NCBI GenBank assembly: GCA_002269645.1
Contig: NIVC01000010.1
Coordinates: 1,798,001 to 1,862,000 of the forward strand
Origin: Macrostomum lignano
Lineage: Eukaryota
DNA length: 64,000 bases
Direction: 5' to 3'
Of this stretch, positions 20,581 to 48,317 are shown piece by piece (the stretch's first letter is position 1; each line of letters opens with the position of its first letter). Below the pieces are notes generated by a model. It worked only from the letters and a program-made list of their open reading frames with translations. It searched no databases and was not told the origin of the DNA. Made by a program: the position numbers and the translations under genes.

Positions 20581-23500
20581 GTGAGGGTTCAGTTAGTTTG
20601 CAGGCAGCTTCAAGCACTTTGGCTTTAGTTAGAGGCCCATTATTACTGCCCATTCCGCCGACTACCCTGAGCATGCACACTAGTGCGCGCGGATACGTAC
20701 GCAGCCATACGCACAGGCACACACTCACACAGGAGTGTACAGCGGCCCTAACTTTATTTATCGTCAGCCATGTACTTGGGGGTTGGCCCTCAGGGCCGTT
20801 AATTTTCAGCCCCGCTGGGAAAAAATTGCAGCGACGGCACTGTGACGACAAGCGACGACAGGCTAGAGACGATTTAGTCTTGAAGTCTTGATTAGCGCCT
20901 GAATATCTGAATATCTGTCATACGAGATTCATCTTTGTTTATCCCGTCTCATTGCTAAACTGCAGATCCGCCGCCTCCGCCCCCCGAACCGGTGCTGGCC
21001 AGGGACTCGGCTTCTAATTGGTGGATCTTAGCTGCGGCCGCACTGGCTATTGGCCTGTTCGGTGCTGCCGCCATCATTACAATGTTTGTCATTGGCAATC
21101 AGCCTATTGATGCGGTGAGATTAAAAACCAGGGCCACTGGTCCCCTGTTTAGGTTTGGAATGTCACTAATTCCATGTGATTCATTTTGGGATGTCTGATT
21201 CCAGATGACTCGGTTTGGGATGTCACTGATTCCAGCTGCTTTTTGTTTGGGATGTCACTGATTCCAGATGCTTCGATTTGGGATGTCACTGATCTCAGAT
21301 GCTTCAGTTTGGAATGTCACCGATTCCAGATATTTGTGTTTAAAATGTCACTGATTCCAGATATTTGTGTTTAGAATGTCACTGATTCCAGATATTTGTG
21401 TTTAGAATGTCACTGATTCCAGATATTTGCGTGTTTAGAATGTCACCGATTCGAGATATTTGTGTTTAAAATGTCACTGATTCCAGATATTTGTGTTTAG
21501 AATGTCACTGATTCCAGAAATTTTGTGTTTAGAATGTCACTGATTCCAGATCTTTGCGTGTTTAGAATGTCACTGATTCCAGATATTTGTGTTTAGAATG
21601 TCACTGATTCCAGATCTTCGTGTTGTTAGAATGTCACTGATTCCAGATCTTCGTGTTGTTAGAATGTTACTGATACTGTAATCCTAAACTTGTCACTGGA
21701 TAATTATCTCGTCACCGCTCGCACCCACAGTACGGAGTCATTATCGACGCCGGGTCCAGCTCATCCAAAGTGTACATCTACACCTGGCCAGCGTCCAAGA
21801 CAAATGGAAATGGCGTAGTGTCTCAACGCGCAGTAGCCAATAATTCTTGTACGTTTTGTTTATAAAATATTTATAAACTGGAAACCAGTTAAGATTAGAT
21901 ACTAAAAATTGTCGAATTATTTTTTGCAGCTGCTCCAATAGAAAGTTCTCAAGGCATTAACCAGATTGAATGGTCGCTAAGATCGTTGGATTCCGTGGTG
22001 CCAGAGGATCGGAAAGCCAAATCTGAACTGTTCCTTGGCGCCACTGCCGGCATGCGAATGTACAGGTGAATGGCATTGTCCGCTGCCAACTGTCATCATG
22101 GGTTCGAGCCCTAGATACTTGATATCTATGGCCAGCCTTGTAGAATTTAGACATGTTTCCTGTCAGTGTCCCATATCTTCAGTTGCTGGGCCTGTTTCCC
22201 AGATCCTCAGTTGCTGGGCCAGCCTCCAAATTCTCAGTTACTGGGCCAGCCTCCAGATTCTCAGTTGCTGTGCCAGCCTCCAGATTCTCAGTTGCTGTGC
22301 CAGCCTCCCAGATCCTCAGTTGCTGTGCCAGCCTCCAGATTCTCAGTTGCTGGGCCAGCCTCCAGATCCTCAGTTGCTGGGCCAGCCTCCTAAGATCCTC
22401 AGTTGCTAGGCCAGCCTCCCAGATCCTCAGTTGCTGGGCCAGCCTCCTAGATCCTCAGTTGCTGGGCCAGCCTCCTAAGATCCTCAGTTGCTGGGCCAGC
22501 CTCCCAGATCCTCAGTTGCTGGGCCAGCCTCCCAAGATCCTCAGTTGCTTGGCCAGCCTCCCAAGATCCTCAGTTGCTGGGCCAGCCTCCCAGATCCTCG
22601 GTTGCTGGGCCAGCCTCCCAAGATCCTCAGTTGCTGGGCCAGCCTCCCAAGATCCTCAGTTGCTGGGCCAGCCTCCCAGATCCTCGGTTGCTGGGCCAGC
22701 CTCCCAGATCCTCAGTTGCTGGGCCAGCCTCCCAAGATCTTCAGTTGCTGGGCCAGCCTCCCAGATCCTCAGTTGCTGGGCCAGCCTCCCAAGATCCTCA
22801 GTTGCTGGGCCAGCCTCCCAGATCCTCAGTTGCTGAGCCTCGATCCCAGATCCTCAGTTCCTGGGCCAGCCTCAATACCAGATTCTCAGTTGCTGCGCAT
22901 GGCGCCATCATTCTAAGAATTCCACTTGACACACAAAAAACCCGCAGCGCCGTCAACAGCACAGCAGCAGAGTTAGTATTGAACGGAGCTCGGCAGGTAC
23001 TAACCAGCAAGTTCGCTTACAAAGTATCCAACGCTACAGGACAGATTCGTATAATCACCGGAGCAGAAGAAGCAGTTGGCGCCTGGATTAGCGTTAATTA
23101 TCTCAAGGTATGCAATATCGCTATTCATTGCCGATATGTATCGAAAAATCACTTTTCTACTGACTCAATTGTAGAACAGTTTCGGAGATTTCGCCTCTTC
23201 CTCGCTGACCTCGCGAGTGGCCAGATCTGTTGGCTACCGTCAGCTAGCTAACGATTTTGACACCTTTGGCAGCTTGGACCTCGGCGGCGCCAGCACTCAG
23301 ATTGCATTCGTTCCGGCTGCCAATTTCACTCCAGCTGATTCGGTATCATCAAAGACTCACATTGTACCGTTGAGTTTGTACGGCAAAGTGTACAATGTGT
23401 ACGCTTATAGCTTCCTGTGCTACGGTAAAGCTGAAGCTGAAAACAGGATGCTGGCTAGCGTTATTGCTAATGCTGGCTATAATAGTTCGGCTGTCATAAA

Positions 23501-26500
23501 TACGCCTTGTTGGCAGGTGAGCATTTTTAGGGGTCTGCTTCTAAAGCATTAAATGTTTTGTAGCCCTGAAGTATCGGATGTTTTATAGCCCTGAAGTATC
23601 GGGGGGTTTTGTAGCCCTGGAGTATCGGGGGGTTTTGTAGCCCTGAAGTATCGGATGTTTTATAGCCCTGAAGTATCGGATGTTTTATAGCCCTGAAGTA
23701 TCGGATGTTTTTTAGCCCTGGAGTATCGGATGTTTTATAGCCCTGGAGTATCGGATGTTTTATAGCCCTGGAGTATCGGGGGGTTTTGTAGCCCTGAAGT
23801 ATCGGATGTTTTATAGCCCTGGAGTATCGGGGGGTTTTGTAGCCCTGAAGTATCGGATGTTTTATAGCCCTGGAGTATCGGATGTTTTATAGCCCTGGAG
23901 TATCGGATGTTTTATAGCCCTGGAGTATCGGATGTTTTGTAGCCCTGGAGTATCGGGGGGTTTTGTAGCCCTGAAGTATCGGATGTTTTATAGCCCTGGA
24001 GTATCGGATGTTTTTTAGCCCTGGAGTATCGGGGGGTTTTGTAGCCCTGAAGTATCGGATGTTTTATAGCCCTGGAGTATCGGGGGGTTTTGTAGCCCTG
24101 AAGTATCGGAGGCTTCAGTAGCCTGAAGTATCGGCGGTTTCAGTAGCCTGAAGTATCGGCGGTTTCAGTAGCCTGAAGTATTGGAAGTTTCAGTAGCCTG
24201 AAGTATCGGCGGTTTCAGTAGCCTGAAGTATCGGCGGTTTCAGTAGCCTGAAGTATCGGCGGTTTCAGTAGCCTGAAGTATCGGCGGTTTCAGTAGCCTG
24301 AAGTATCGGCGGTTTCAGTAGCCTGAAGTATCGGCGGTTTCAGTAGCCTGAAGTATCGGCGGTTTCAGTAGCCTGAAGTATCGGCGGTTTCAGTAGCCTG
24401 AAGTATCGGCGGTTTCAGTAGCCTGAAGTATCGGAAGTTTCAGTAGCCTGAAGTATCGGAGGTTTCAGTAGCCTGAAGTATCGGCGGTTTCAGTAGCCTG
24501 AAGTATTGGAAGTTTCAGAACCAATAAGTGTTTATAGAAGTTTTTATGGCCCTTAATTATAGATGGTTTCAGCGCTCTGAAGTATCAGATCAGAGTGATG
24601 ATCTTGCACCAATCCGCCATACTACACAGGCTGACTACACAGCAACTGTCCGAGCAACTGACGTATTTCAACGTCCCTGCTCTGATCGCTGGCAGCTGCA
24701 GCCTTCGCCGCCTCCGCCATCAGTTCTCGCTAGACTCAATTTCACAATTCGGGGCACTGGCAGCTATGAGAACTGCTCAAAATTAGTTGGTAAATTTTTT
24801 AACGCCAGTTGCGATCAGAGCACGTGCTCGTTTAATGGCGTTTTCCAACCGGCGCCCGCTAGCAAGTTTGTGGCATTCTCCGGCTTCTACTATGTGGCGT
24901 CATTTTTCAACGCTAGTAATATTGGATCCGACCGAATGCAGTTTGTTAATGCTGTGAGAGCCTTCTGCCAGAAGAGATATCTCGCATCCATTGGCTATAG
25001 CGATAGCTTCCTGAGATGGTACTGCTTTGATGGAGTGTACGTTCTGTCGTTATTGAATGCCTATGGATTCAATGAGACTAACTGGGGTCTGCTTGAGTTT
25101 GAGGACTCGGTATGTTTGGGGGGTTTTATACATATTTTTTTCTGGGATAATGGGATTTTAATAATAGGATTACCTTGAGTCGAATAAGAGAGTTTATGAG
25201 GATTTTAATAATGAGTCCACCTTGGGTCTAATGGGAAATTGAGGATTTAAATTATGAGTCCATCTTAAGTCGAATGGGAGAAAGGGTCCGGGGATTTTAA
25301 TAATGAGTCCACCTTGAGTCGAATGGGAGAATGAAGATTTTAATAATGAGTCCACCTTCCTTGAGTCGATTGGGAGAAAGAGGATTTTGATAATGAGTCC
25401 ACTTTCCTTGAGTCGATTGGGAGAAAGAGGATTTTGATAATGAGTCCACCTTGAGTCGAATGGGGGAATGAGGATTTTAATAATGAGTCCACCTTGAGTC
25501 GAATGGGAGAATGGGGATTTTAATAATGAGTCCACCTTGAGTCGATTGGGAGAATGAGGATTTTAATAATGAGTCCACCTTGAGTCGATTGGGAGAAAGA
25601 GGATTTTAATAATGAGTCCACTTTCCTTGAGTCGATTGGGAGAATGAGGATTTTAATAATGAGTCCACCTTGAGTCGAATGGGAAAATGAGGATTTTAAT
25701 AATGAGTCCACCTTGAGTCGAATGGGAAAATGAGGATTTTAATAATGAGTCCACCTTGAGTCGAATGGGGGAATGAGGATTTTAATAATGAGTCCACCTT
25801 GAGTCGAATGGGGGAATGGGGAATTTAATAATGAGTCCACCTTGAGTCGAATGGGAGAATGAGGATTTTAATAATGAGTCCACCTTCCTTGAGTCGATTG
25901 GGAGAAAGAGGATTTTGATAATGAGTCCACTTTCCTTGAGTCGATTGGGAGAAAGAGGATTTTGATAATGAGTCCACTTTCCTTGAGTCGATTGGGAGAA
26001 AGAGGATTTTGATAATGAGTCCACCTTGAGTCGAATGGGGGAATGAGGATTTTAATAATGAGTCCACCTTGAGTCGAATGGGAGAATGGGGATTTTAATA
26101 ATGAGTCCACCTTGAGTCGAATGGGAAAATGAGGATTTTGATAATGAGTCCACTTTCCTTGAGTCGATTGGGAGAAAGAGGATTTTGATAATGAGTCCAC
26201 CTTGAGTCGAATGGGGGAATGAGGATTTTAATAATGAGTCCACCTTGAGTCGAATGGGAAAATGAGGATTTTAATAATGAGTCCACCTTGAGTCGATTGG
26301 GAGAAAGAGGATTTTAATAATGAGTCCACCTTGAGTTGATTGGGAGAATGAGGATTTTAATAATGAGTCCACCTTGAGTCGATTGGGAGAAAGAGGATTT
26401 TAATAATGAGTCCACCTTAAGTCGAATGGGAAAATGAGGATTTTAATAATGAGTCCACCTTGAGTCGAATGGGAAAATGAGGATTTTAATAATGAGTCCA

Positions 26501-28347
26501 CCTTGAGTCGAATGGGGGAATGAGGATTTTAATAATGAGTCCACCTTGAGTCGAATGGGGGAATGAGGATTTTAATAATGAGTCCACCTTGAGTCGAATG
26601 GGGGAATGAGGATTTTAATAATGAGTCCACCTTGAGTCGAATGGGGGAATGAGGATTTTAATAATGAGTCCACATTGAGTCGAATGGGGGAATGAGGATT
26701 TTAATAATGAGTCCACCTTGAGTCGAATGGGAAAATGAGGATTTTAATAATGAGTCCACCTTGAGTCGAATGGGGGAATGAGGATTTTAATAATAAGTCC
26801 ACCTTGAGTCGAATGGGGGAATGAGGATTTTAATAATGAGTCCACCTTGAGTCGAATGGGAGAATGAGGATTTTAATAATGAGTCCACCTTCCTTGAGTC
26901 GATTGGGAGAAAGAGGATTTTAATAATGAGTCCACATTGAGTCGAATGGGGGAATGAGGATTTTAATAATGAGTCCACCTTGAGTCGAATGGGAGAATGA
27001 GGATTTTAATAATGAGTCCACCTTCCTTGAGTCGATTGGGAGAAAGAGGATTTTAATAATGAGTCCACCTTGAGTCGAATGGGAGAATGAAGATTTTAAT
27101 AATGAGTCCACCTTGAGTCGAATGGGAGAATGAGGATTTTAATAATGAGTCCACCTTGAGTCGAATGGGGGAATGAGAATTTTAATAATGAGTCCACCTT
27201 GAGTCGAATGGGGGAATGAGGATTTTAATAATGAGTCCACATTGAGTCGAATGGGGGAATGAGGATTTTAATAATGAGTCCACCTTGAGTCGAATGGGAG
27301 AATGAGGATTTTAATAATGAGTCCACCTTCCTTGAGTCGATTGGGAGAAAGAGGATTTTAATAATGAGTCCACATTGAGTCGAATGGGGGAATGAGGATT
27401 TTAATAATGAGTCCACCTTGAGTCGAATGGGAAAATGAGAATTTTAATAATGAGTCCACCTTAAGTCGATTGGGAGAATGAGGATTTTAATAATGAGTCC
27501 ACCTTGAGTCGAGTAGGAGAATGAAGATTTTAATAATGAGTCCACCTTGAGTCGATTGGGAGAATGAGGATTTTAATAATGAGCCCACATTGAGTCGAAT
27601 GGGAGAATGAAGATTTTAATAATGAGTCCACCTTGAGTCGATTGGGAGAATGAGGATTTTAATAATGAGCCCACATTGAGTCGATTGGGAGAATGAGGAT
27701 TTTAATAATGAGCCCACATTGAGTCGAATGGGAGAATGAGGATTTTAATAATGAGTCCACCTTGAGTCGAGTAGGAGAATGAAGATTTTAATAATGAGTC
27801 CACCTTGAGTCGATTGGGAGAATGAGGATTTTAATAATGAGCCCACATTGAGTCGAATGGGAGAATGAAGATTTTAATAATGAGTCCACCTTAAGCTTCT
27901 GTAGTTGAGGTAGCAGCACTTTAAATAACTATTCTAGCAAACTTTTTTACACAAAAATTTAATGCATGTTGCTATTTGTAATAATTAATTTTAGATTACT
28001 GTCAATCATTCTACAAGTGCAGGCGAACAGGTAAGGCTGGTACAAAAATTATAATTTGTGGACTTTATTGTTTCTTTATAATGTTTAATTTTAACAAAAG
28101 TAAACTGGTGGTTAAAATGTCTCAAATCTTTTGTCAGGCCACGTCAGCTAACAAAGTGGGCTGGTCGCTTGGCTACACGATACTTCAGTCCGGTCTGATA
28201 CCCGCCGAATCGCCTCTGATGTCGCTCTCGCTCCCCATGTTCATCATTCTATTAATAATGTTCGCCGCCTTCTTGGGGTTCGCCGTGCTGTTTGGCTGTT
28301 TGGGTAGGCGAGTTAAACAGCGAGCTCAAGGCTATGTGACTATCTGA
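20325..28347 (+). CDS. ENTPD: CD39/GDA1-family ecto-NTPDase (apyrase) with an N-terminal ubiquitin-like domain, two TM helices and a C-terminal GYVTI motif; 616 aa (628 with the optional exon)
   Basis: Exons 20325-20580, 20966-21114, 21731-21848, 21930-22065, 22948-23107, 23175-23516, 24630-25109, [27995-28030], 28138-28347; all GT-AG and phase-compatible; 1851 nt without the optional exon. Apyrase motifs: YGVIIDAGSS (ACR1), LGATAGMR (ACR2), GAEEAVGAWISVNYL (ACR3), GSLDLGGASTQ (ACR4), VGWSLGY (ACR5); also CSFNGVFQP and FVAFSGFYY of the CD39 clade. In-frame TAA at 20310 precedes the ATG. Linkage of exon 1 is less certain than that of the catalytic exons. Confidence 0.9.
21150..21672 (+). repeat. 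31 bp minisatellite in NTPDase intron 2
   Basis: Unit GTTTAGAATGTCACTGATTCCAGATATTTGT; degenerate at the 5' edge. Confidence 0.9.
22175..22895 (+). repeat. 28-29 bp minisatellite in NTPDase intron 4
   Basis: Unit CCAGATCCTCAGTTGCTGGGCCAGCCTC. Confidence 0.95.
23555..24520 (+). repeat. 25 bp minisatellite with two sub-arrays in NTPDase intron 6
   Basis: TAGCCCTGAAGTATCGGATGTTTTA up to ~24110, then CAGTAGCCTGAAGTATCGGCGGTTT. Confidence 0.95.
25185..27893 (+). repeat. 43 bp minisatellite (47 bp variant) in NTPDase intron 7
   Basis: Unit GAGTCCACCTTGAGTCGAATGGGAGAATGAGGATTTTAATAAT; variant units carry an extra TTCC. Confidence 0.95.
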
Positions 28348-29867: not shown

Positions 29868-30900
29868 TGCCCTAGAATCATGTCTTGAATCGCCCTAGAA
29901 TCATGTCTTGAATCGCCTTACAATCATGTCTAGAATCGCCATAAAATCATGTCTAGAATCGCCCTACAATCATGTCTAGAATCGCCATACAATCATGTCT
30001 AGAATCGCCCTACAATCATGTCTAGAATCGCCATACAATCATGTCTAGAATCGCCATACAATCATGTCTAGAATCGCCATAAAATCATAATCGCCCTACA
30101 ATCTTGTCTAGAATCGCCATACAATCATGTCTTGAATCGCCATACAATCATAATCGCCCTACAATCTTGTCTAGAATCGCCCTGCAATCATGTCTTCAAT
30201 CGCCCTACAATCATGTCTAGAATCGCCCTACAATCATGTCTTGAATCGCCCTGCAATCATGTCTTGAATCGCCCTGCAATCATGTCTTGAATCGCCCTGC
30301 AATCATGTCTTGAATCGCCCTGCAATCATGTCTTGAATCGCCCTGCAATCATGTCTTGAATCACCCTACAATCATGTCTAGAATCGCCCTACAATCTTGT
30401 CTTAAATCACCCTGCAATCATGTCTTGAATCGCCCTGCAATCATGTCTTGAATCGCCCTGCAATCATGTCTTGAATCGCCCTGCAATCATGTCTTGAATC
30501 GCCCTGCAATCATGTCTAGAATCGCCCTACAATCATGTCTTGAATCGCCCTGCAATCATGTCTTGAATCGCCCTGCAATCATGTCTTGAATCGCCCTGCA
30601 ATCATGTCTTGAATCGCCCTGCAATCATGTCTTGAATCGCCCTGCAATCATGTCTTGAATCACCCTACAATCATGTCTAGAATCGCCCTACAATCTTGTC
30701 TGGAATAGCCCTGCAATCATGTCTTGAATCGCCATACAATCATGTCTGGAATCGCCCTACAATCATGTCTGGAATCGCCCTACAATCATGTCTTGAATCG
30801 CCCTGTAATCATGTCTTGAATCGCCCTGCAATCATGTCTTAAATCGCCCTACAATCATGTCTAGAATCGCCATACAATCATGTCTTGAATCGCCCTGTAA
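29868..30900 (+). repeat. 23 bp minisatellite
   Basis: Unit GAATCGCCCT(A/G)CAATCATGTCT(A/T). Confidence 0.95.
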
Positions 30901-31502
30901 TTCTGCCCAGAGTTGTTTTTCTACAAAAGCTCGGAAAAACATCGATTCGATTTGCGACTCTTCAAAGCTTAGTTCATAGTTTTTTCATGCTTATTTTTTA
31001 CATTCCCTTAACTTGTAAAATACTTCATTGATAATTGGCACAGTTGTCATTTTCAATATCCCATGCGCGGTCCGTTGATGATTTATTATTTAGCACACTT
31101 CTAATTATTTTTCATAAATGATATTTTTTTAAGTTTTCGATTGTTATGCCATTTGCGAGTCTCATCCTTTTGTTTTTTACTTGTGGACCGTTTCTATTTT
31201 TCATTGATCAATTTGCTCTAAAATGTGAAAATCTAATTGATAGGTCATCATCACTAATATAAATATACAGAATGTACCTAAAATAATTGTATTGCTGAAT
31301 CATTTGATTTTCCTAGTAAGTTATTTGATCATTTTATTTAAAAGTTAGCTTAAAACATTGGCCCCTAAAATTTATTTACCAAAAATTTTGAATCATACTA
31401 AAATTGTCCATTTATACTGTGCACTTTAGAATTACTCTTCAAACCCGTTTCTATTAAAAACAGGCCTTCAAATCCGTAGCCAATGAAAATCCTTGAGACC
31501 CC

Positions 31503-33414
31503 TTGAGAATCGGCCTTCAAATCCAAACCACCTTAAGAATCGGCCTTCAAATCCAGACCACCTTAAAAATCGACCTTCAAATCCGGACCACCCTAAGAAT
31601 TGACCTTCAAATCCAGACAACCTTAAGAATCGGCCTTCAAATCCAGACCACCTTAAAAATCGACCTTCAAATCCGGACCACCCTAAGAATCGACCTTCAA
31701 ATCCAGACAACCTTAAGAATCAGCCTTCGAATCCAGACTTCCTTAACGATCGGCCTTTAAATCCAGACACCTTAAGAATCAGCCTTCAAATCCAGACATT
31801 AAGAATCGGCCTTCAAATCCGGACCACCTTAGGAATCGACCTTCAAATCCAGACCACCTTAAGAATCGACCTTCAAATCCGGACCACCCTAAGAATCGGC
31901 CTTCAAATCCAGATAACCTTAAGAATCGACCTTCAAATCCAGATAACCTTAAGAATCAGCCTTCGAATCCAAACTTCCTTAACGATCGGCCTTTAAATCC
32001 AGACACCTTAAGAATCAGCCTTCAAATCCAGACATTAAGAATCGGCCTTCAAATCCGGACCACCTTAGGAATCGACCTTCAAATCCAGACCACCTTAAGA
32101 ATCGACCTTCAAATCCGGACCACCCTAAGAATCGGCCTTCAAATCCAGATAACCTTAAGAATCGACCTTCAAATCCAGATAACCTTAAGAATCAGCCTTC
32201 GAATCCAAACTTCCTTAACGATCGGCCTTTAAATCCAGACACCTTAAGAATCAGCCTTCAAATCCAGACTATTAAGAATCGGCCTTCAAATCCGGACCAC
32301 CTTAAGAATCGACCTTCAAATCCAGATAACCTTAAGAATCGACCTTCAAATCCAGATAACCTTAAGAATCAGCCTTCGAATCCAAACTTCCTTAACGATC
32401 GGCCTTTAAATCCAGACACCTTAAGAATCAGCCTTCAAATCCAGACTATTAAGAATCGGCCTTCAAATCCGGACCCCCTTAAGAATCGACCTTCAAATCC
32501 AGATAACCTTAAGAATCGACCTTCAAATCCAGATAACCTTAAGAATCAGCCTTCGAATCCAAACTTCCTTAACGATCGGCCTTTAAATCCAGACACCTTA
32601 AGAATCAGCCTTCAAATCCAGACTATTAAGAATCGGCCTTCAAATCCGGACCACCTTAAGAATCGGCCTTCAAATCCAGACCACCTTAAAAATCGGCCTT
32701 CAAATCCAGACCACCTTAAGAATAGGCCTTAAATCCAGACCACCTTAAGAATCGGCCTTCAAATCCAGACCACCTTAAGAATCGACCTTCAAATCCAGAT
32801 AACCTTAAGAATCGGCCTTCAAATCCAGACCACCTTAAGAATCGGCCTTCAAATCCAGACCACCTTAAGAATCGGCCTTAAATCCAGACCACCTTAAGAA
32901 TCGGCCTTCAAATCCAGACCACCTTAAGAATCGGCCTTAAATCCAGACCACCTTAAGAATCGGCCTTCAAATCCAGACCACCTTAAGAATCGGCCTTAAA
33001 TCCAGACCACCTTAAGAATCGACCTTCAAATCCAGACCACCTTAAGAATCGGCCTTCAAATCCAGACCACCTTAAGAATCGGCCTTAAATCCAGACCACC
33101 TTAAGAATCGGCCTTAAAACCAGACCACCTTAAGAATCGGCCTTCAAATCCAGACCACCTTAAAAATCGGCCTTCAAATCCAGACCACCTTAAGAATCGG
33201 CCTTCAAATCCAGACCACCTTAAGAATCGGCCTTAAATCCAGACCACCTTAAGAATCGGCCTTAAATCCAGACCACCTTAAGAATCGACCTTCAAATCCA
33301 GACCACCTTAAGAATCGACCTTCAAATCCAGACCACCTTAAGAATCGGCCTTAAATCCAGACCACCTTAAGAATCGGCCTTCAAATCCAGACCCCTCGAA
33401 AATCGGCCTTCAAA
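31503..33414 (+). repeat. 30 bp minisatellite with higher-order repeats, directly upstream of cactin
   Basis: Unit AAGAATCGGCCTTCAAATCCAGACCACCTT. Confidence 0.95.
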
Positions 33415-33500
33415 AGCAGATCCATTATGAAGACAAAGCGATTTTTTAAATAAAAAAACTGTAACCAACTTTTTAATACTTTCTGGAAACGAAATCAAAG

Positions 33501-36500
33501 CATCATCAGCATTATCGCGACAGAGATCGCGTGGACAGAGACAGAGAGAGGGATAAAACTAGAGACAGAGATCGTGACAGACAAAGCGGCAGGCGTCGCG
33601 AAGATCGTCGCGAAGATCGAAAGCATCACCGCCATGCCGATGAGGTAGAGAAGCACAGAAAATCGAGACACAGACGGAAGTCCTCCAGCAGCAGCAGCAG
33701 TTCGTCCTCGTCAGATGATTCTCCAGCCAGACAAAAATCTGAAAAACAGTCCAGCGGCGCCTCTATTGAAGAGCGTCGTCGGGTGAAAGCGCTGCTCAAA
33801 GCTGCCGAGACTCCCGAGCAGAAGCGGGCCCGTCGGTTGGCTAAGAAGGCGGCTAAGTCGGAACGACGGCGTCGGGAACTGGGCTGGGAGGGCGACTACA
33901 CGGATAGAGATAATCCGTTTGGCGACGAGAAGCTAACGCAGACTTTCGTTTGGCATAAGAAACTGCAACGCGAGGGCGGCACTATGGCCGACGTGGAGAG
34001 AAAAGCGGCTGAGAATCGGGCTGAGCTCGAAAAGGTTTTGTTTTGGGTTCATTGTTTAAGTCATTGTTTGGTTATAAGTCATAATTCTAATTCAAAATTT
34101 TAGTCATTGACGTCATAGATCAGTCATTGAAGTCATAGATCAGTCATAGATCAGTCATAGATCAGTCATTGAAGTCATTGATCAGTCATTGAAGTCATAG
34201 ATCAGTCATTGAAGTCATAGATCAGTCATTGAAGTCATAGATCAGTCATTGAAGTCATTGATCAGTCATTGAAGTCATTGATCAGTCATTGAAGTCATAG
34301 ATCAGTCATTGAAGTCATTGATCAGTCATTGAAGTCATTGATCAGTCATTGAAGTCATAGATCAGTCATTGAAGTCATTGATCGGTCATTGATCAGTCAT
34401 TGAAATCATAGATCAGTCATAGATCAGTCATTGATGTCATAGATCAGTCATTGAAGTCATTGATCGGTCATTGATCAGTCATTGAAATCATAGATCGGTC
34501 ACTGATGTGTCATCACATGCTCATTAGGATCATTGCTATAGCCTTATCCTATTCCCCAAACAAACCGCAGGTCCGCGAGCGTTGCCGTCAGAACGAGCTG
34601 GAACGCGAGGCCCGGCTGAAGGAGCAGGAGCAGGAGCAGCGCGATCGCGAGTCTGAGAACTTTCGCCAGTGGTGGCAGCAGGAGGACGCGTTCCACTTGA
34701 AGCAGGCGCGGGCCAGATCGGCCATCCGCATAGCCGAAGGTCGCGCCAAGCCTATCGACCTGCTGGGCAGGTATGCCGAAGCTTTGCAAAGAATCTCTGG
34801 TATTAAAATTAAACGCGATGACGGGGCGGACGACAATGATGACGAATTTGATGAAGACGAGAGTCTGGCTTTCTTAGACGCCCATTCGCCGGACGCCCTG
34901 CTCACCGGCTTGAGCGTTGACGATCTCGAGGATTTAAAAGTCGATATCGGCGTCTATCAGAAATTGGAACGGCAGAGCGGCTTAACCGAAGGCGCCTGTC
35001 GGGACAGCGAGACTTTCTGGAGCTGCGTAGCTCTGCTAGTTCAGCACGCTCTGGATAGCAAGACTGCACCGGCTGCCAGCTCCGCCACGGCTGCCGTTGC
35101 TGACAGAATCGACGCCGTCATCAGGGGCAAGTCGGCCAGCCAGTTGGCCGCTCTGGAAGACTCCGTGTCCGCCAGAATCTGCGCGGCCGGACCGGGCACC
35201 GATCTGGCCTACTGGGAGGAGATGCTGGACAAAGTTAAAGTGGCCAAGGGGAAGGCTACGCTGCAGGAGTTGCATAAAGTGCTGCTGCGTAGGCGAATGC
35301 AGAGACTGCAGGTTAGTAGGTTTGATAGAATCTTCATCTTCATTTAATACCTTAACTAGCGCTAATCCCCAATCGGAAGTATCCCGCTAATCCATACCCG
35401 GAAACCCGATGAAAACTCTAGCGCTCTGGCGATTCTAGCGCTTATTTTTATGGTAGATCGTTTTCAACTGGAAATACCCCGCTGATCCTCATCAGGAAAT
35501 ACCCGGCTGATCCTCATCAGGAAATACCCGGCTGATCCTCATCAGGAAATACCCCACTGATCCTCATCAGGAAATACCCCACTGATCCTCATCAGGAAAT
35601 ACCCCACTGATCCTCATCAGGAAATACCCGGCTGATCCTCATCAGGAAATACCCCACTGATCCTCATCAGGAAATACCCCACTGATCCTCATCAGGAAAT
35701 ACCCCACTGATCCTCATCAGGAAATACCCCCATTGATCCTCATCAGAAAATACCCAGATAATCCCATCCGAAAATTCCCCCCTAATGTCCAACCGAAAAT
35801 GCCCCGCTAATCCCTATCTAAAATACCCCTCACTTTGATTATAAAATCTAAAAAATACCCCTAATCCCAGTCCAGGAGCACCCATCTATACCATTCCCGC
35901 CGTCAAAACACTCTAGGAGCGTCAGTCGGCCGACCAGGGAGCGGAAGTCGACGACCCGGAAGTGGCAGCGGCGTCGGCCACGGCAGCGACGGCAACCAGC
36001 AGCGCCGCCTCCGAGGAAGGCGGCGGCGACACCGCCGAGTCAGCCGATGACGACGAGGCCGAGCAGCAGAGGCAGCAACAGCAAAAGCAACAGCAGCAGC
36101 AGCAGCAGGCTCTTGATGCGTACGATTCTGGTCGATATTCGCCGGCAAAACTCGACCCGGACACGGTCGCCGGTCAGATAGTGATCAACTGGAGCGAAGA
36201 GTCGGTCAGGCTGGAGCATCTCCGACGTCAGGCTGGCGACGCGGCAGCGCCCGAGCCGGAAGAGAAAACCGAAGAGATTGCGGTGAAAACTCCCGGCCTG
36301 GCGGCCTGGTCAGACCGGCTGAAGCCAAAGAAGCCGCGGTATTTTAATCGGGTTAATACCGGCTACAATTGGGGCGCTTATAATCGGACGCATTTCGATT
36401 CGGACAATCCGCCGCCGAAGATTGTGCAGGTGAGAGCGGAAACTAATTTAAATTTGTGTTTATTTTCGTTTTGATTAAAATCCTACTGGTTGGCAAACTT

Positions 36501-38191
36501 TTTACCTCAAGGAGAATCCAGCTCAGAATGCAGAATCCAGCTCAAAATGCAGAATCTAGCTCAGAATGCAGAATCCAGCTCAAAATGCAGAATCTAGCTC
36601 AGAATGCAGCGAAGAATCCAGCTCAGAATGTGGAATTCAGCTCAGAATGTGGAATCCAGCTCAGAATGTGGAATCCAGCTCAGAATGTGGAATCCAGCTC
36701 AGAATGTGGAATCCAGCTCAGAATGTGGAATCCAGCTCAGAATGTGGAATCCAGCTCAGAATGTGGAATCCAGCTCAGAATGTGGAATCCAGCTCATAAT
36801 GAGGAACCCAGCTCAGAATGTGGAATCCAGCTCATAATGTGGAACCCAGCTCAGAATGTGGAACCCAGCTCAGAATGTGGAATCCAGCTCAGAATGTGGA
36901 ATCCAGCTCAGAATGTGGAATCCAGCTCAGAATGTGGAATCCAGCTCAGAATGTGGAATCCAGCTCAGAATGTGGAATCCAGCTCATAATGAGGAACCCA
37001 GCTCAGAATGTGGAATCCAGCTCATAATGTGGAACCCAGCTCAGAATGTGGAACCCAGCTCAGAATGTGGAACCCAGCTCAGAATGTGGAATCCAGCTCA
37101 GAATGTGGAATCCAGCTCAGAATGCAGAATCCAGCTCAGAATGCAGAACCCAACTCAGAATGCAGAATCCAGCTCAGAATGCAGAATCCAGCTCAGAATG
37201 CAGAATCCAGCTCAGAATGCAGAATCCAGCTCAGAATGCAGAATCCAGCTCAGAATGCAGAATCCAGCTCAGAATGCAGAATCCAGCTCAGAATGCAGAA
37301 TCCAGCTCAGAATGCAGAATCCAGCTCAGAATGCAGAATCCAGCTCAGAATGCAGAATCCAGCTCAGAATGCAGAATCCAGCTCATGGCTACGGGCCAGA
37401 TGAGAGAGGAAAGGAAAGGGAATAGAAGGGATAAGAAACAATACAGGGTGAAAAAAGGGGGGAGACGATCTCAGAGAGAGGGGAGTGGGGATAGGAGAGA
37501 GAGAAGAGACCAAAGCCTTGAGCGGGCCAGATTACTGTTGTAAAGTTTCAATGGACCCGAAGGCCGGATAGAGAGGCCTCTGAATTGCTTCGGTTCACCC
37601 AGCTGTAAAATGGGTGCCAGCATTAGCTGGGGTAATTGAGGCTGTGTGTGGCGACCCCCCAGTCCTTGGACTGAACAGCCGTACGCAGCCTTCAGATGCG
37701 CCGCGCAAATAGCTGCGGCTGAACTGTCGGTTGCAAATCTGGCCCAATTGGGGCAGGTGTAATCAATTGTTAATATTTTTTTTAGTTATACATGGTAGAT
37801 AGTTATATTAAGCACAGGGTAGACAGACTGCTGGTGGACAGGTTAGTGAGATATTTTAGGACAGGTAGAGGGGCTGATAATGGACAGGTACCTAGACTCG
37901 AGTTCATAAGCCAAACCTCGCCTGTTAATCGCTCAGGGCTACAAGTTCAACATATTCTACCCGGATCTGCTGGACAAGTCCAAGGCGCCCAGCTACAGCA
38001 CCGAGCCGTGCAAAGACGATCCGCAATTTGCCATCCTGCGCTTCACTGCTGGGCCGCCTTATGAAGACGTTGCTTTCAAAATTGTCCGCAACGAATGGGA
38101 CACATCATTTAGGCACGGGTTCCGCTGCCAGTTTGTTAATAATACGTTCCAGTTGCACTTTCATTTTCGTAGGAATCGCTACAGAAAGTAG
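33501..38191 (+). CDS. CACTIN: Cactin (spliceosome C-complex factor); 5' end unresolved
   Basis: Exons ~33501/33510-34034, 34571-35311, 35917-36429, 37937-38191, all joined in phase 0. Motifs ETPEQKRARRLAKK, NPFGD..FVW.KK, QEDAFHLKQARARSAIRIAEGRAKPIDLL, KKPRYFNRVNTGYNWGAYNRTHFDSDNPPPKIVQ|GYKFNIFYPDLLDK..GPPYEDVAFKIV..W..FRCQF..FQLHFHF..RYRK*. No in-frame ATG between TAA 33474 and the conserved region. Confidence 0.95.
34103..34503 (+). repeat. 20 bp (2 x 10 bp) minisatellite in the first modelled cactin intron
   Basis: Unit GATCAGTCATTGAAGTCAT(A/T). Confidence 0.9.
35470..35755 (+). repeat. 25 bp minisatellite in a cactin intron, with a decaying 3' edge to ~35880
   Basis: Unit GGAAATACCCCACTGATCCTCATCA. 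Confidence 0.9.
36512..37386 (+). repeat. 19 bp minisatellite in the last cactin intron
   Basis: Unit GAATCCAGCTCAGAATG(TG/CA). Confidence 0.95.
37555..37720 (+). mobile_element. Possible SINE fragment in the cactin intron
   Basis: CACCCAGCTGTAAAATGGGT at 37596-37615 resembles the conserved central-domain motif of invertebrate tRNA-derived SINEs; no A/B boxes recognised. Confidence 0.35.
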
Positions 38192-38359
38192 AATTGTTGC
38201 TTATCTCCGTGCTATTTGCATTGACGTTTGCGTTTATTATCTGATTCTACTACTGTTGTATCCGCGAGTTTTAGTAGCAGGTAGCGGGTGTAAATGTAAT
38301 AATTTGCTGGGACATTTTTTTGCGATTGAGGACATTCTAGGGTTATAGATGATGTAAGC

Positions 38360-38940
38360 TTGATCTTACATCTCCGCTCACTCAGAATCCTTGATCCTGC
38401 ATCTCCGCTCACTCAGAATCCTTGATCCTGCATCTCCGCTCCCTCAGAATCCTTAATCCTGCATCTCCACTCCCTCAGAATCCTTGATCCTGCATCTCCG
38501 CTCCCTCAGCTTCCTTAATCCTGCATCTCCACTCCCTCAGAATCCTTGATTCTGCATCTCCGCTCCCTCAGCTTCCTTGATCCTGCATCTCCGCTCCCTC
38601 AGAATCATTGATCCTGCATCTCCACTTCCTCAGTATCCTTGATCCTGCATCTCCGCTCCCTCAGCTTCCTTGATCCTGCATCTCCGCTCCCTCAGAATCC
38701 TTAATCCTGCATCGCCGCTCCCTCAGAATCCTTGATCCTGCATCTCCGCTCCCTCAGAATCCTTAATCCTGCATCTCCGCTCCCTCAGAATCCTTAATCC
38801 TGCATCTCCGCTCCCTCAGAATCCTTAATCCTGCATCGCCGCTCCCTCAGAATCCTTAATCCTGCATCTCCGCTCCCTCAGAATCCTTAATCCTGCATCG
38901 CCGCTCCCTCAGAATCCTTAATCCTGCATCTCCGCTCCCT
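38360..38940 (+). repeat. 31 bp minisatellite 3' of cactin
   Basis: Unit CAGAATCCTT(A/G)ATCCTGCATCTCCGCTCCCT. Confidence 0.95.
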
Positions 38941-38984: not shown

Positions 38985-39907
38985 ATGAAAGAGTGAGTAT
39001 GGAACAGGCTTTGATTTTTTTGTCAGTGCAGGCGCTTGAAAAACTGGTTGGGTTGATTTTAAGCGCACGATAACCTTGACTACTTTGTACTTTAGCTGTC
39101 ATTTTTCTATTGTATGCACTTTTAAATGTGTCAGCTCAAAACCCTGCCCATAATTCTTCTTTATCTGTTATTTTAATTACTGAGTATATGCCGCTTGTAT
39201 GATTATAATTTGTGCGTTTTATATATATATACATATGTGCTACCGTTTCTACGTGTTAGGCGTGTATATCTATTCCGCTGGGAGTACTGCAACACACGGT
39301 AAACTGTGAAATGTATATTGATATTGGGTTTATTGATTTGATCGATTTAAATCTGATATAAATATTATACGAGTATTCGTATATTACAATTTGCATATTA
39401 ATCTGGATTGCAGTCCAAAAACTCTGCTTTGTGGGCTTAGCCTCAGTACCCCTTCTGAAAATCGCCCTCTGATCTCCATTGAGAATCGCCCTCTGATCTC
39501 CATTGAGAATCGCCCTCTGATCCCCATTGAGAATCGCCCTCTGATCTCCATTGAGAATCGCCCTCTGATCTCCATTGAGAATCGCCCTCTGATCCCCATT
39601 GAGAATCGCCCTCTGATCCCCATTGAGAATCGCCCTATATTCCAGATTTCAATCATCTGCGCTTTGACAAGCGGCATTGCACGGTAGATTAGTATCATGG
39701 ATGCGGCAGTCGGTTCCCATATGAAAGGCAAAAAATAGATAAAATATCTAAATCATAGCATTCCATTCCTTTTTTAGGCTGAGCATACTGGTGTCATCTG
39801 AGACTCCAATTGAGCAGGAAGATGACAATGTAACTATATACGGATTTGCTATTGCTTATGCAATTGCTGCCGTTAAAGAATCTGTCTATGTCGTTATTGT
39901 ATTATAA
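38985..39907 (+). CDS. Candidate small hydrophobic protein (orphan, speculative)
   Basis: Phase-compatible putative exons [38985-38992, 39032-39051], 39414-39445, 39646-39683, 39778-39907 give ..QKLCFVGLASISIICALTSGIARLSILVSSETPIEQEDDNVTIYGFAIAYAIAAVKESVYVVIVL*; the first intron is only 39 nt and the donors are weak; no family recognised. Confidence 0.25.
39455..39637 (+). repeat. 24 bp minisatellite
   Basis: Unit GAGAATCGCCCTCTGATC(T/C)CCATT. Confidence 0.9.
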
Positions 39908-45250: not shown

Positions 45251-46116
45251 TAGCTGTTTTTGCTGCATCCTTAATTACCTCCCAACGCGGCTAGAATTGC
45301 CAGCTCTCTCTAAAGCTTACTTGACAGACTCTCGAATCAAGCCTCAACCTATGGGATGAGCAGAAACGTAAAAAAGTGAATCAAGGCTTGTGTTAACCAG
45401 TAAAGTAGCAAAAATCAAACAGAATGCAATGTACCGGTAAAAATTTGAAATTCAGCTAATAACTAAAATATTATCTGTTCCAATTAGCTGAACGAGACAT
45501 CTAAGAGATGCTATATACCTTGAGACGAAAGGTCAATCGAATGTTAACTATCATCGGCAACTCCTATTACCGCTGCGATATTTGAGATAAAAACTGCGTA
45601 TTAAATACTAGACTAAACCGGATTCCGGGCACGCAAACGTTCTTCGTGACGTGACGTACGCTCGTGCCTCGTATTTCACTTTTTTAAATTCGTGATCTAA
45701 GTCGTAGCTCGTGTTTCTTTTGTTGAAAAATGACTTCATAACTGATTGAATTGAAAATTTCTTGATTTGCTCTAAAAAATTTTAGGACACTGGAGCCAAA
45801 GGCAGCTTTTGGGGCTTAAAATTGTCTTGTGGGTTGTACCGTGCGATTCTCACCCAGGAGAACCAACCCACAAAACACAGAGAATGTACATGCCAGACGA
45901 TTAGAAAGTCAGGCCCGCTGTGCACCCTGAGTGAGCGCGTGTGTGAGTGCGTGGCTGAGCTTGCATGTGCTCAGCAGTCAGAGGAATGGGCAGAATTTCC
46001 TCAGACGTCGCGAGGCTTGGACGCTAAGCTGCTCTGTTCATATTTGCTTTATGGCTTTAAAAGCCCGGGAAATTGATTTTTAACAAATGTCTTTTTCATC
46101 AATCATCGACTGTCCC

Positions 46117-47733
46117 TCACACAGAGGTCTCGTACACCAGGCAGACAGCCTCGACCAGCATGGGAGTCGGGCTAGGGCTGGGACTGGCACTGCGGGCCCC
46201 CTGAAGGCAGCCGCGACCTCCTGGTGGCAGCAGGCGCACATGCTGCTGCTGATTGCCGTCTCTGCTGAAAACCGGTATAAGACCAGCCGACTTCTTGTCT
46301 CTCCGCGGCTGCTCCTCGCAGTCCTGACTGAGCGGCTCGCTGAACCGGACCAGCCGAGGCCGCTGACGCCATTGGCGACGCCGATGCCAGCAGCAGAAGT
46401 TGGCCAGGCCTTCGCGGCAACGACAGACCAGCCGGCGACCGAAATCCGTGGTGCAGGCCAGCAGTAGGAAGTTGAACAGCGAGTCCAACTCAACCAGAGT
46501 GTTCACAACCAGTTCCGTGAGCGGCGCTTTGTCCTCAACAAAGCCGCAGAGATCGGTGGGACTCTCCAGGATTAAACAGCTGACTGACAGGGCCACGATA
46601 ATGCGAATCGCTTGCCGTTCTCGCCGGCTCTGTCGGCGGCCCTGCCGCATGTCGGCGGGCGGCCGGGTTCGCCTGGCCGGAGCCAAGCGGCTTCGAGCCG
46701 CGGAGGCCTGGCGCAGCACCCGCACCGTGATGCAGGTGGCCACGAATATTGACACGATCGGGAGCAGGCCCTGCAGCACCGGTTGGATGGGTGATAAGGT
46801 TTAGTATATTAGACTAGCGGTTTTCGGCCCCCCTCTGGGGGTATAATTGATCTCAGCAGATATTGTTGATCCTGCTTTCCCATACTATGCATCCCATCCT
46901 ATTACTATGGATCCTATAACATACTATATAGATCCCATCCCATCCTATTACTATGGATCCCATAGTAGGGTTAAAAGGTTAAAAGGTTAGAAAGGGATTA
47001 CAGATAGCTGCAGTTTACATCAGCGTGCGTCTCAGCACTAGCACTATAATTTCGAGCTAAACCCTTCCCCTAAAAATGCGCATTAGGCATCACCTGACCT
47101 CACCTGGAAAGCGTAGAATGCAAATTCGATCGCCCGTGCCTGACTCGAACTTAAATACTGACTTCTCAGCTGCCCATCCTGCGCCATCACCATGGCAACG
47201 CTAAGCGTCATAGCTACACAGCCGATACCGGTTTCCATGACAACCAGGTAAGCCAGACGAAACGCTGTGCCTCGCTGCGACGTCAACGGACGAAAGACCG
47301 CTTCTACGCGCGACCAGGACACGAGGCACATCGTCCAATTGCGCATGCACAGTGCGGCGCGAAGCGCGCACAGCAGCACCAAAATTGGCGCCGGAGTCTC
47401 CGCAGATTGGTCAGCCGAGGCGGGCAACACGGCGGCAGGCAGGTAGGAGGCGATCACGCAGCTGTGAAACAGCAGCTCGAACAGGGACATGGCGACCAAC
47501 AGGCGGCGCAGCACTGGGTGCACGCTGCGACCTCGGCGCAGAAAATGGGCAAACGCCAGTACAGACAGGCAGCAATTCACGCTGGACAATGGCAGGTAGA
47601 AGTACGGCTCCAGTGGGTGAGCGAACCGTTTCACTGGGCTGCTGATATTGCTGAAGTTGCTGACGCCGCCGCCGATTCTGTTGTAGTTTGACGTCAAAGC
47701 AGCTGCAAGCTCGTCGTAAGTTGCCAAGTCCAT
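46117..47733 (-). CDS. Rhodopsin-class (peptide-receptor-like) 7TM GPCR, 427 aa, two exons
   Basis: Exons 47733-47104 and 46770-46117, phase 0 (CAG|GTGAGG ... CTGCAG|GGC). N-terminal NFS/NIS sequons, hydrophobic TM segments, WSRVEAVFRPL at the DRY position, GLLPIVSIFVATCITV (TM5), AIRIIVALSVSCLILESP (TM6), LVELDSLFNFLLLAC (TM7). Confidence 0.8.
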
Positions 47734-48317
47734 ATTGTGCTCTAGGCCAGCTAAAAGATTTCGTGCAAGTAAAGACTTCTTCTGTTTTGTGCCTACATAG
47801 GTATATATATAGAGAGAGCTACCGTTCTTCATCCGTGCATGCGTATGTGCTGAAGCGGCTTAAAACCCAGGGAGCGAGAGCAGCCAATCCGGTTGCAAAA
47901 TTGGATTCGGAGAAGGCGGTTGCTGAGGCTGAATCGCGGAGGATGAGGTGGAGAGGCTGGGTAGGGGGGATGAGCTACTCTCCGGAGAGGCTAAGAGGAT
48001 ATTTCAAAGGGGATTATTGAGTGACTTAGGAGCAGCTAAGTTCTACTGAATCCCCATGCGTCTGCAGCATAAATGAGTTTTTGTTAATCCACCTGTAAGA
48101 GAAAACAAATTAAATTTTTATTTGTTTCTTTGTTTGTTCAGTGATTAATTTTGCATTCTGTTTTGTTGCTGGTGATTTTAATGAAGAATTGAAAGAAAGA
48201 AGAAATTTTAACCAAAATCAGTGATTACAAACCACTTTTACAAATGGAGATGATAATAAATAATGCCGTTTTAAAATATTCATTTGTGTTCATGCCTTTT
48301 ATCATACAGGAGCTGTC

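What the first reader, a model, noticed from the sequence alone, without database searches (positions are those of the whole stretch)
33474..33540. Cactin has no start codon of its own: candidate for a spliced-leader-donated AUG
Seen: the frame is closed by TAA at 33474, and the first in-frame ATG (GGTMADV, ~33985) lies after the conserved ETPEQKRARRLAKK and NPFGD motifs. Two AG acceptors (AAG ending 33500, CAG ending 33509) are exactly phase 0 and follow a T-rich stretch; the nearby ATG at 33427 is out of frame and closes after 8 codons. Established: flatworm spliced leaders end in AUG, which can act as the initiator. Inference: SL-AUG + CATTATCGC gives M-H-Y-R-D-R-D. The alternative is an unseen upstream mini-exon beyond the 1.9 kb array.
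Basis: partly seen in the sequence, partly recalled or inferred. Interest (0 to 1): 0.7.

Follow-up and report, generated by a model that had tools for sequence, protein, structure and literature searches.

The report
Cactin start codon supplied by spliced leader

Summary
The window is Macrostomum lignano assembly Mlig_3_7 (scaffold NIVC01000010.1). The gene is the splicing factor Cactin, with 4 exons on the + strand.

TAA at 33474-33476 closes the frame. The only in-frame ATG in exon 1 is at 33984, downstream of residues that are invariant in nine animal Cactins. AG|33501 and AG|33510 are both phase 0.

The M. lignano spliced leader (SL) ends in ATG, and use of the flatworm SL AUG as initiator is published. 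I reached no RNA reads, so the support here is indirect:
- GenBank annotates this gene (PAA94483.1) as 5'-partial, starting at GAA 33486, also phase 0.
- Given the TAA nine bases upstream of that start, the annotated transcript must begin at 33484-33486.
- That boundary follows CTTTCTG, one base off the published trans-splice acceptor motif [T/C]TNCAG.
- An older-assembly model of the same gene reads Gln (CAG) there instead of Leu (CTG).
- No credible upstream ATG exon exists in the 5.1 kb intergenic region.

Most likely product: SL-AUG + GAA..., giving METKSKHHQHYRDRDR... rather than MHYRDRD.

This is a known mechanism and a routine new example. The one curiosity is the TG/AG discrepancy at the acceptor.

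The parts
33474..33476 (+). In-frame TAA that closes the Cactin reading frame upstream
33459..33485 (+). Acceptor-like region ahead of the annotated 5' end. It holds candidate branch sites CTGTAAC (33459-33465) and TTAAT (33473-33477), then a pyrimidine run ending CTTTCTG. That ending is one base (T33484) away from the published trans-splice acceptor motif [T/C]TNCAG.
   Evidence: Sequence. Motif from PMC8629364. Only 0.9% of window positions follow [TC]TNCNG. The ML2 model P0121 reads Q (CAG) where the window reads L (CTG). The branch sites are inference from sequence only.
33486..34034 (+). Cactin exon 1 as annotated in GenBank (5'-partial CDS PAA94483.1 starts at GAA 33486, phase 0). With the SL AUG the product begins METKSKHHQHYRDRDR.
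   Evidence: window identical to NIVC01000010.1; gene start L001:10001 = window 33486; donor AAG|GTTTTG
33499..33500 (+). Phase 0; would give M-HHQHYR.
33508..33509 (+). Phase 0; would give M-HYRDRD.
33984..33986 (+). First and only in-frame genomic ATG of exon 1 (Met168 in the METKSK numbering). It lies downstream of the invariant ETPE.KR.RRL..K and DNPFGD residues.
33427..33453 (+). Out-of-frame upstream ATG with an 8-codon ORF. It lies in the presumed outron, the 5' pre-mRNA segment that trans-splicing discards.
34571..35311 (+). Cactin exon 2 (holds most of Cactin_mid)
35917..36429 (+). Cactin exon 3
37937..38191 (+). Cactin exon 4 (CactinC_cactus), with stop TAG at 38189-38191
   Evidence: the GenBank CDS ends at L001:14706 = window 38191
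31496..33414 (.). 1.9 kb array of a 30-nt unit directly upstream. It contains no ATG and no GT on the + strand, so it cannot hold a start-codon exon or a splice donor.
33594..33619 (+). 12-nt coding tandem repeat (CGTCGCGAAGAT x2.2). The GenBank protein lacks one copy (4 aa, REDR), although the genome has it.

Best explanation
The Cactin pre-mRNA of Macrostomum lignano is SL trans-spliced immediately upstream of window position 33486. The 35-nt spliced leader (...TTATTGCATG) replaces the outron, meaning the 5' pre-mRNA segment discarded by trans-splicing. Here the outron includes the out-of-frame ATG at 33427 and the in-frame TAA at 33474.

The leader's 3'-terminal AUG becomes the initiator, fused in phase 0 to GAA ACG AAA. 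The result is a 686-aa Cactin starting METKSKHHQHYRDRDR. The gene therefore encodes no initiator of its own.

In this assembly the acceptor dinucleotide reads TG (T33484), whereas the older ML2 assembly implies CAG. Either this is an allelic or paralogous variant, or it is a consensus or polishing error. If the T is real in this copy, the next AGs (ending at 33500 and 33509) are both also in phase 0. They would still place the SL AUG in frame, giving proteins 5 or 8 residues shorter.

What is shown:
- the frame structure;
- the absence of a usable genomic ATG;
- conservation upstream of Met168;
- the identity of the organism;
- the annotated 5'-partial boundary.

What is inferred:
- that the boundary is an SL junction;
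- that the SL AUG is the codon actually translated.
For: 1. The window is 100% identical to M. lignano Mlig_3_7 scaffold NIVC01000010.1 around the gene.

2. The M. lignano SL is CGGTCTCTTACTGCGAAGACTCAATTTATTGCATG. About 30% of genes are trans-spliced, and these are enriched for conserved genes (PMC8629364). Macrostomum authors themselves mark the terminal ATG as a translation start (PMC10468722).

3. In Schistosoma mansoni the SL AUG is in frame in 28% of trans-spliced transcripts, and more than 40 cDNAs need it (Cheng et al. 2006, as cited in PMC9851317; also PMC12582326, and PMC7653826).

4. GenBank PAA94483.1 (BOX15_Mlig030086g1) is marked 'partial' and begins ETKSK, which is window 33486. 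The in-frame TAA lies nine bases upstream of that start. A 5'-partial ORF starting at that codon therefore requires a transcript 5' end at 33484-33486.

5. Gene 5' ends in that annotation were set by SL-trimmed transcripts and by peaks of SL-containing reads, using the TBONE pipeline (PMC5730564).

6. Gene models from the separately annotated ML2 assembly start at the same place. P0002, P0003 and P0070 start ETKSK. The frameshifted models P0004 and P0006 start one base later.

7. The boundary follows CTTTCTG. Only 0.9% of window positions follow [TC]TNCNG. ML2 model P0121 reads FQETKSK, which means TTT CAG GAA. Its only amino-acid difference from the window in the first 483 residues is this L to Q change.

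8. No in-frame ATG occurs before 33984, and three out-of-frame ATGs precede it. There are 26 invariant Cactin columns upstream of Met168.

9. No ATG followed by a phase-0 GTRAG donor exists in the 5.1 kb between the upstream gene's stop codon and the Cactin ORF. The 1.9 kb array has no ATG and no GT on the + strand.

10. The upstream GDA1/CD39 gene is on the same strand. The spacer is about 1.0 kb once the tandem arrays are subtracted. That sits at the published operon threshold and would make trans-splicing obligatory.
Against: - No SL-containing read or transcript for this gene could be retrieved, so the junction is inferred from annotation boundaries only.
- The dinucleotide before 33486 in this assembly is TG, not AG, so the canonical acceptor is absent from the very sequence under study.
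- The CAG reading rests on one protein model from an error-prone assembly.
- I could not see whether GenBank or the macgenome browser flags this gene as trans-spliced.
- A 5'-partial annotation can also result from an incomplete transcript.
Confidence: 0.72

Rival explanations
1. The SL AUG is donated, but at the first reader's acceptors (AG ending at 33500 or 33509). This would give MHHQHYRDRD or MHYRDRD as the main product of this gene copy.
For: - These are the only AGs between 33439 and 33522, and both are in phase 0.
- The site at 33485 is TG in this assembly.
- A TTAAT branch-like site at 33473-33477 lies 24-33 nt upstream of them (sequence).
Against: - The GenBank model and five ML2 models all place the 5' end at 33485-33487, not at 33501 or 33510.
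- Neither site fits [T/C]TNCAG well: TCAAAG and CATCAG (motif).
- The pyrimidine content of the 20 nt upstream is only 0.40-0.45.
- Genes with multiple SL sites are rare in Macrostomum, at 0.2-1.4%.
Confidence: 0.12
2. An ATG-bearing upstream exon is cis-spliced onto the same acceptor region. It would lie beyond the tandem arrays, possibly within or before the upstream GDA1/CD39 gene.
For: - Flatworm acceptors are often shared between cis- and trans-splicing (PMC12582326).
- Repeat-rich spacers break transcript assemblies (PMC8629364).
Against: - Between 28348 and 33476 there are 16 ATG-to-phase-0-GT candidates. None has a GTRAG donor, and 15 of the 16 end at donors inside the tandem arrays; the remaining one is a bare ATG followed by GTTTC.
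- The unique 600 nt at 30897-31495 has no candidate at all.
- Two independent annotations found no such exon.
Confidence: 0.06
3. The mRNA is not trans-spliced. Translation starts either at a near-cognate codon (for example the in-frame CTG at 33483 or ACG at 33489) or at Met168, which would give an N-terminally truncated Cactin. Alternatively this copy is a non-functional allele.
For: - In-frame CTG at 33483 with G at +4, and ACG at 33489.
- The Pfam Cactin_mid and CactinC_cactus domains both lie downstream of Met168.
- The acceptor is TG in this copy.
Against: - CTG 33483 lies upstream of the annotated transcript start.
- A scanning ribosome would meet three out-of-frame AUGs before Met168.
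- 26 invariant residues would be lost.
- The ORF is intact over all 4 exons, with no sign of decay.
Confidence: 0.06
4. T33484 is an assembly artefact. Mlig_3_7 was polished with RNA-seq reads, and reads carrying the SL end ...ATG next to GAAACG could have overwritten the genomic A of CAG with the T of the SL.
For: - Pilon polishing used Illumina DNA and STAR-mapped RNA-seq (PMC5730564).
- ML2 and Mlig_3_7 were built from the same PacBio data, yet differ at this one base.
- T is the base the SL carries at position -2.
Against: - The neighbouring base at -3 is still C, not the A of the SL. Reads aligned end to end would have changed both.
- Soft-clipped reads would change neither.
- A true variant among the duplicated chromosome copies of line DV1 explains it equally well.
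Confidence: 0.15

Closest known systems
[quoted passage not shown]
   Same: - The SL ends in AUG.
- The recipient ORF is open up to the acceptor, in frame with that AUG.
- There is no genomic initiator ahead of conserved protein sequence.
- The outron carries upstream out-of-frame AUGs and a stop, all of which are removed.
   Different: - The species is different: a free-living macrostomid rather than a parasite.
- Use of the SL AUG is not experimentally shown here.
- The acceptor dinucleotide is TG in the reference assembly.
SL trans-splicing in Macrostomum lignano (Wasik 2015; Wudarski 2017; Ustyantsev & Berezikov 2021)
   Same: - The same organism and the same assembly.
- A conserved housekeeping gene, the class that is enriched among trans-spliced genes.
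- A pyrimidine-rich acceptor context.
- A same-strand upstream gene at an operon-like, repeat-adjusted distance.
   Different: - Those papers do not discuss this gene. No paper in the searched library mentions Mlig030086.
- They do not analyse use of the SL AUG.
slORFs: ORFs created by SL-borne start codons (slORFfinder, PMC9851317)
   Same: The start codon lies in the leader and the body of the ORF lies in the recipient mRNA.
   Different: slORFs are mostly alternative or extended ORFs found by ribosome profiling. Here the SL AUG would be the only way to make the full-length conserved protein.
Cactin (splicing factor; Pfam Cactin_mid plus CactinC_cactus)
   Same: Both domains are present well above threshold. 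The conserved N-terminal ETPEEKRARRLAKK and DNPFGD motifs are present. The leading region rich in Arg, Asp and Ser resembles that of other animal Cactins.
   Different: The other aligned Cactins start with their own Met. This one has none in the genome.

Membership tests
Gene that takes its initiator AUG from the flatworm spliced leader | The organism has an SL whose last three bases are AUG | tested here: met
   The window is M. lignano. The SL ...TTATTGCATG is reported in PMC8629364 and PMC5173321. No SL RNA gene lies in the window itself.
Gene that takes its initiator AUG from the flatworm spliced leader | The mRNA carries the SL at its 5' end (SL-bearing reads or cDNA at the acceptor) | not testable with these tools
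   No M. lignano transcripts or reads were reachable. There is only indirect support: a 5'-partial GenBank CDS starting at 33486, from a pipeline that cuts genes at SL-read peaks.
Gene that takes its initiator AUG from the flatworm spliced leader | A canonical AG acceptor ([T/C]TNCAG in M. lignano) immediately before the first exon base | tested here: inconclusive
   At 33480-33485 the window reads TTTCTG, with TG rather than AG. ML2 model P0121 implies TTTCAG. Downstream AGs exist at 33500 and 33509 but fit the motif poorly.
Gene that takes its initiator AUG from the flatworm spliced leader | The SL AUG is in frame with the main conserved ORF | tested here: met
   33486, 33501 and 33510 are all phase 0 relative to the Cactin frame.
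Gene that takes its initiator AUG from the flatworm spliced leader | No genomic in-frame AUG between the acceptor and the conserved protein sequence | tested here: met
   The first in-frame ATG is 33984, which is Met168. Invariant residues K106-G165 precede it.
Gene that takes its initiator AUG from the flatworm spliced leader | Translation actually starts at the SL AUG | not testable with these tools
   This needs ribosome profiling, N-terminal proteomics or a reporter assay.
Cactin | Cactin_mid (PF10312) and CactinC_cactus (PF09732) domains above the gathering score | tested here: met
   146 bits against a cut-off of 23, and 183 bits against a cut-off of 30. Identity to animal Cactins is 36-41% over 84-99% of the length for nearly all of the full-length hits listed.

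The most novel reading that the evidence does not exclude
T33484 is a real variant in one of the duplicated gene copies of line DV1. It destroys the main trans-splice acceptor, and this copy then shifts to the two downstream AGs. Both of these are in phase 0, so the SL AUG still opens the Cactin frame. That would be a natural example of in-frame back-up acceptors buffering a gene that depends entirely on the leader for its start codon. A less likely version is SL addition at a non-AG (TG) acceptor.
Probability: 0.15. Interest if true: 0.45.

Novelty: new member of a known kind. Interest (0 to 1): 0.25.

Why it matters
The main value is for annotation. A conserved, essential splicing factor in a model flatworm has no genomic start codon, so gene finders either truncate it to Met168 or flag it as 'partial', as GenBank does. 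Recognising the SL-donated AUG gives the correct full-length protein, METKSK..., 686 aa.

It also adds a free-living, early-branching flatworm example to a mechanism documented experimentally mainly in schistosomes. It shows that anyone designing transgenes or knock-ins for such genes in M. lignano must supply an ATG or keep the acceptor.

The TG/AG discrepancy is a reminder that assemblies polished with RNA-seq, or collapsed from polyploid copies, can misreport splice sites.

Tried and rejected
Searches that found nothing useful:
- Protein searches for transcript-derived M. lignano Cactin proteins that would include the SL Met. The N-terminal query returned only two distant hits, possibly because of the composition-biased N-terminus. 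The mid-region query returned only ML2 UniProt models.
- Exact look-up of six hypothetical full-length products: M+ETKSK, M+HHQHY and M+HYRDR, each with one or two copies of the REDR repeat. None is in the collection.
- Look-ups of three exon-level ORFs, intended to fetch other assemblies of the locus. None is on record.
- A scan of the metagenome contigs for the SL 3' end plus the exon, allowing all three junctions. No hits.
- Searches for Mlig030086 or Cactin in the paper library and in the supplements of three M. lignano papers. Nothing found. PMC8629364 has no supplements held, and Wasik 2015 is not held.
- The SL sequence is not in the window, even with up to 3 mismatches, and there are no Rfam matches.

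Explanations considered and rejected:
- An assembly error hiding an ATG. [quoted passage not shown]
- An exon inside the 30-nt array. The array has no ATG and no GT on the + strand.
Full report
**What the sequence is.** The window around the finding is 100% identical to scaffold NIVC01000010.1 of the Macrostomum lignano assembly Mlig_3_7, GCA_002269645.1. The gene is the splicing factor Cactin.
- The best protein hit is GenBank PAA94483.1, 'hypothetical protein BOX15_Mlig030086g1, partial', at 99% identity. Hundreds of animal Cactins follow, mostly at 36-41% identity.
- Pfam finds Cactin_mid (146 bits) and CactinC_cactus (183 bits).
- My gene model on the + strand is: exon 1 ending at 34034, exon 2 at 34571-35311, exon 3 at 35917-36429, exon 4 at 37937-38191. 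All introns are GT-AG, all are phase 0, and the stop is TAG at 38189-38191.

**Checking the observation.**
- TAA at 33474-33476 closes the frame.
- The frame then runs open to the exon 1 donor.
- The only in-frame ATG is 33984 (GGT-M-ADV).
- ATG 33427 is out of frame and stops after 8 codons.
- There are further out-of-frame ATGs at 33634, 33640 and 33715.
- No AG occurs between 33438 and 33499.
- The AGs ending at 33500 and 33509 both leave the next base in phase 0.

An alignment with eight Cactins, from insects, fish, frog, tunicate, leech, fluke and bryozoan, shows 26 invariant columns upstream of the internal Met, including ETPE.KR.RRL..K and DNPFGD. A protein starting at 33984 would lose conserved sequence. 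One nuance: the Pfam Cactin_mid model begins only after that Met, so this argument rests on the ortholog alignment.

**Does the organism have the required leader?** Yes.
- The M. lignano spliced leader (SL) is CGGTCTCTTACTGCGAAGACTCAATTTATTGCATG.
- About 30% of genes are trans-spliced, with enrichment for conserved genes.
- The top motif at trans-splice acceptors is [T/C]TNCAG (PMC8629364; PMC5173321).
- Authors of the M. cliftonense and M. hystrix genomes explicitly mark the terminal ATG as a translation start codon (PMC10468722).
- Use of the flatworm SL AUG as initiator was established by Cheng et al. 2006. Later papers report it as in frame in 28% of trans-spliced S. mansoni transcripts and required by more than 40 cDNAs (PMC9851317; PMC12582326; PMC7653826).

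**Where is the junction?** I could reach no reads, so this rests on annotation boundaries.
- GenBank's CDS is 5'-partial and starts with ETKSK, which is GAA at window 33486, also phase 0.
- The in-frame TAA lies just nine bases upstream of that codon. A 5'-partial ORF beginning at that codon implies that the annotated transcript starts at 33484-33486. A longer transcript would have been bounded by the stop and called from Met168.
- In that annotation, 5' ends came from SL-trimmed de novo transcripts and from peaks of SL-containing reads, using the TBONE pipeline (PMC5730564).
- Models from the separately annotated ML2 assembly begin at the same place. P0002, P0003 and P0070 begin ETKSK. The frameshifted models P0004 and P0006 begin one base later.
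- The boundary is preceded by TTTTTAATACTTTCTG. Only 0.9% of positions in the window follow [TC]TNCNG, so the boundary looks like an acceptor rather than a random end.
- With the SL attached, ...GCAUG|GAA ACG AAA UCA AAG reads M-E-T-K-S-K-H-H-Q-H-Y-R, giving a 686-aa protein.

**The catch.** The dinucleotide before 33486 is TG, not AG, in this assembly.
- ML2 model P0121 (UniProt A0A1I8IUU2) starts FQETKSK, where the window encodes FLETKSK. The L to Q change is its only amino-acid difference from the window in the first 483 residues.
- Gln can be reached from CTG by a single change only as CAG. That ML2 contig therefore most likely reads TTTCAG|GAA, a perfect match to the published acceptor motif.
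- Both assemblies were built from the same PacBio data of line DV1. Mlig_3_7 was then polished with Illumina DNA and also with RNA-seq.
- T33484 is therefore one of two things. It may be a real variant among the duplicated chromosome copies of DV1. Or it may be a consensus or polishing error; notably, T is the base the SL carries at that offset, although the unchanged C at -3 argues against a simple imprint of SL reads.
- The GenBank protein also lacks one copy of a 12-nt coding repeat that the genome has. This shows that the model was built from a transcript of a slightly different allele or copy.

If T33484 is real in this copy, the acceptor at 33485 is dead. As the main junction they are less likely, for three reasons.
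- No annotation starts there.
- Their fit to the motif is poor (TCAAAG, CATCAG).
- Their upstream pyrimidine content is low.

**Alternatives.**
- Upstream cis-spliced ATG exon. Between the stop codon of the upstream gene (28347) and the Cactin frame there are 16 ATG-to-phase-0-GT candidates. None has a GTRAG donor, and 15 of the 16 end at donors inside the tandem arrays. The 1.9 kb 30-mer array has no ATG and no GT on the + strand, and the unique 600 nt at 30897-31495 has no candidate.
- Non-AUG initiation. CTG 33483 lies upstream of the annotated transcript start.
- Start at Met168. A scanning ribosome would first meet three out-of-frame AUGs, and conserved residues would be lost.

**Context.** The upstream neighbour on the same strand is a GDA1/CD39 nucleoside phosphatase gene, with exons between about 22.9 and 28.3 kb and a stop at 28345-28347. 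Of the 5138 nt spacer, 4103 nt are three tandem arrays. That leaves about 1.0 kb, right at the repeat-adjusted 1 kb limit used to call operons in this species. If Cactin is a downstream operon gene, trans-splicing would be obligatory. This is inference only.

**Verdict.**
- The interpretation that the AUG comes from the leader is well supported indirectly, and it matches how the public annotation already treats the gene.
- The specific acceptors and N-terminus proposed are probably secondary at best.
- The mechanism has been known since 2006, so this is a routine new example.
- One small unresolved oddity remains, TG against AG at the acceptor. Read-level data would settle it in minutes.

Noticed in passing
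window 33484 (L001:9999): The base two positions before the annotated Cactin 5' end is T (CTG) in Mlig_3_7, but the ML2-derived UniProt model A0A1I8IUU2 implies A (CAG). It is the only amino-acid-changing difference in the first 483 residues. Mlig_3_7 was polished with RNA-seq, and T is the base the SL carries at that offset.
   Followed up: partly
window 33594-33619: A 12-nt coding tandem repeat (CGTCGCGAAGAT, encoding REDR). The genome has two full copies, but GenBank protein PAA94483.1 has one. The deposited model therefore does not translate the deposited genome exactly, probably because a transcript from another allele was mapped with a 12-nt gap.
   Followed up: partly
window 22900-28347 (+ strand): An upstream GDA1/CD39 (NTPDase/apyrase) gene on the same strand. 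Pfam hits fall on ORFs at 22574-23251, 23217-23552 and 24528-25178. A C-terminal hydrophobic stretch that looks like a membrane anchor ends at stop 28345-28347. The gene was not among the called genes returned for the GenBank locus. After subtracting repeats, its distance to Cactin is about 1 kb, so the two may form an operon.
   Followed up: partly
window 21153-57343 (30 TRF rows): Nearly every intron and spacer holds its own long array of a 17-43 nt unit, and each unit is different. Cactin intron 1 has a 20-mer (34102-34474), intron 2 a 25-mer (35470-35755) and intron 3 a 19-mer (36514-37385). A 31-mer lies downstream (38359-38940). Upstream there are a 24-mer, a 23-mer and a 30-mer. The arrays are strongly strand-asymmetric in composition.
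   Followed up: no
window 38186-38192 and 39769-39830: Two ML2 models (P0003, P0070) continue past the Cactin stop with LSILVSSETPIEQEDDN. This corresponds to a donor AA|GTAGAA overlapping the stop codon, spliced to the acceptor TTTTTTAG|GCTGAGC at 39777. That acceptor may be shared with a downstream trans-spliced gene, or it may be a mis-joined model.
   Followed up: no
window 46117-47832 (- strand): Two long minus-strand ORFs (220 and 249 aa) that look hydrophobic and membrane-protein-like. ML2 model P0121 wrongly appends the antisense of this region (46087-46467, + strand) to Cactin.
   Followed up: no
protein search tool behaviour: Queries restricted to the N-terminal or middle part of the protein failed to return PAA94483.1, even though it matches them almost identically (exactly, for the mid-region query). 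The absence of transcript-derived hits in those searches is therefore weak negative evidence.
   Followed up: no
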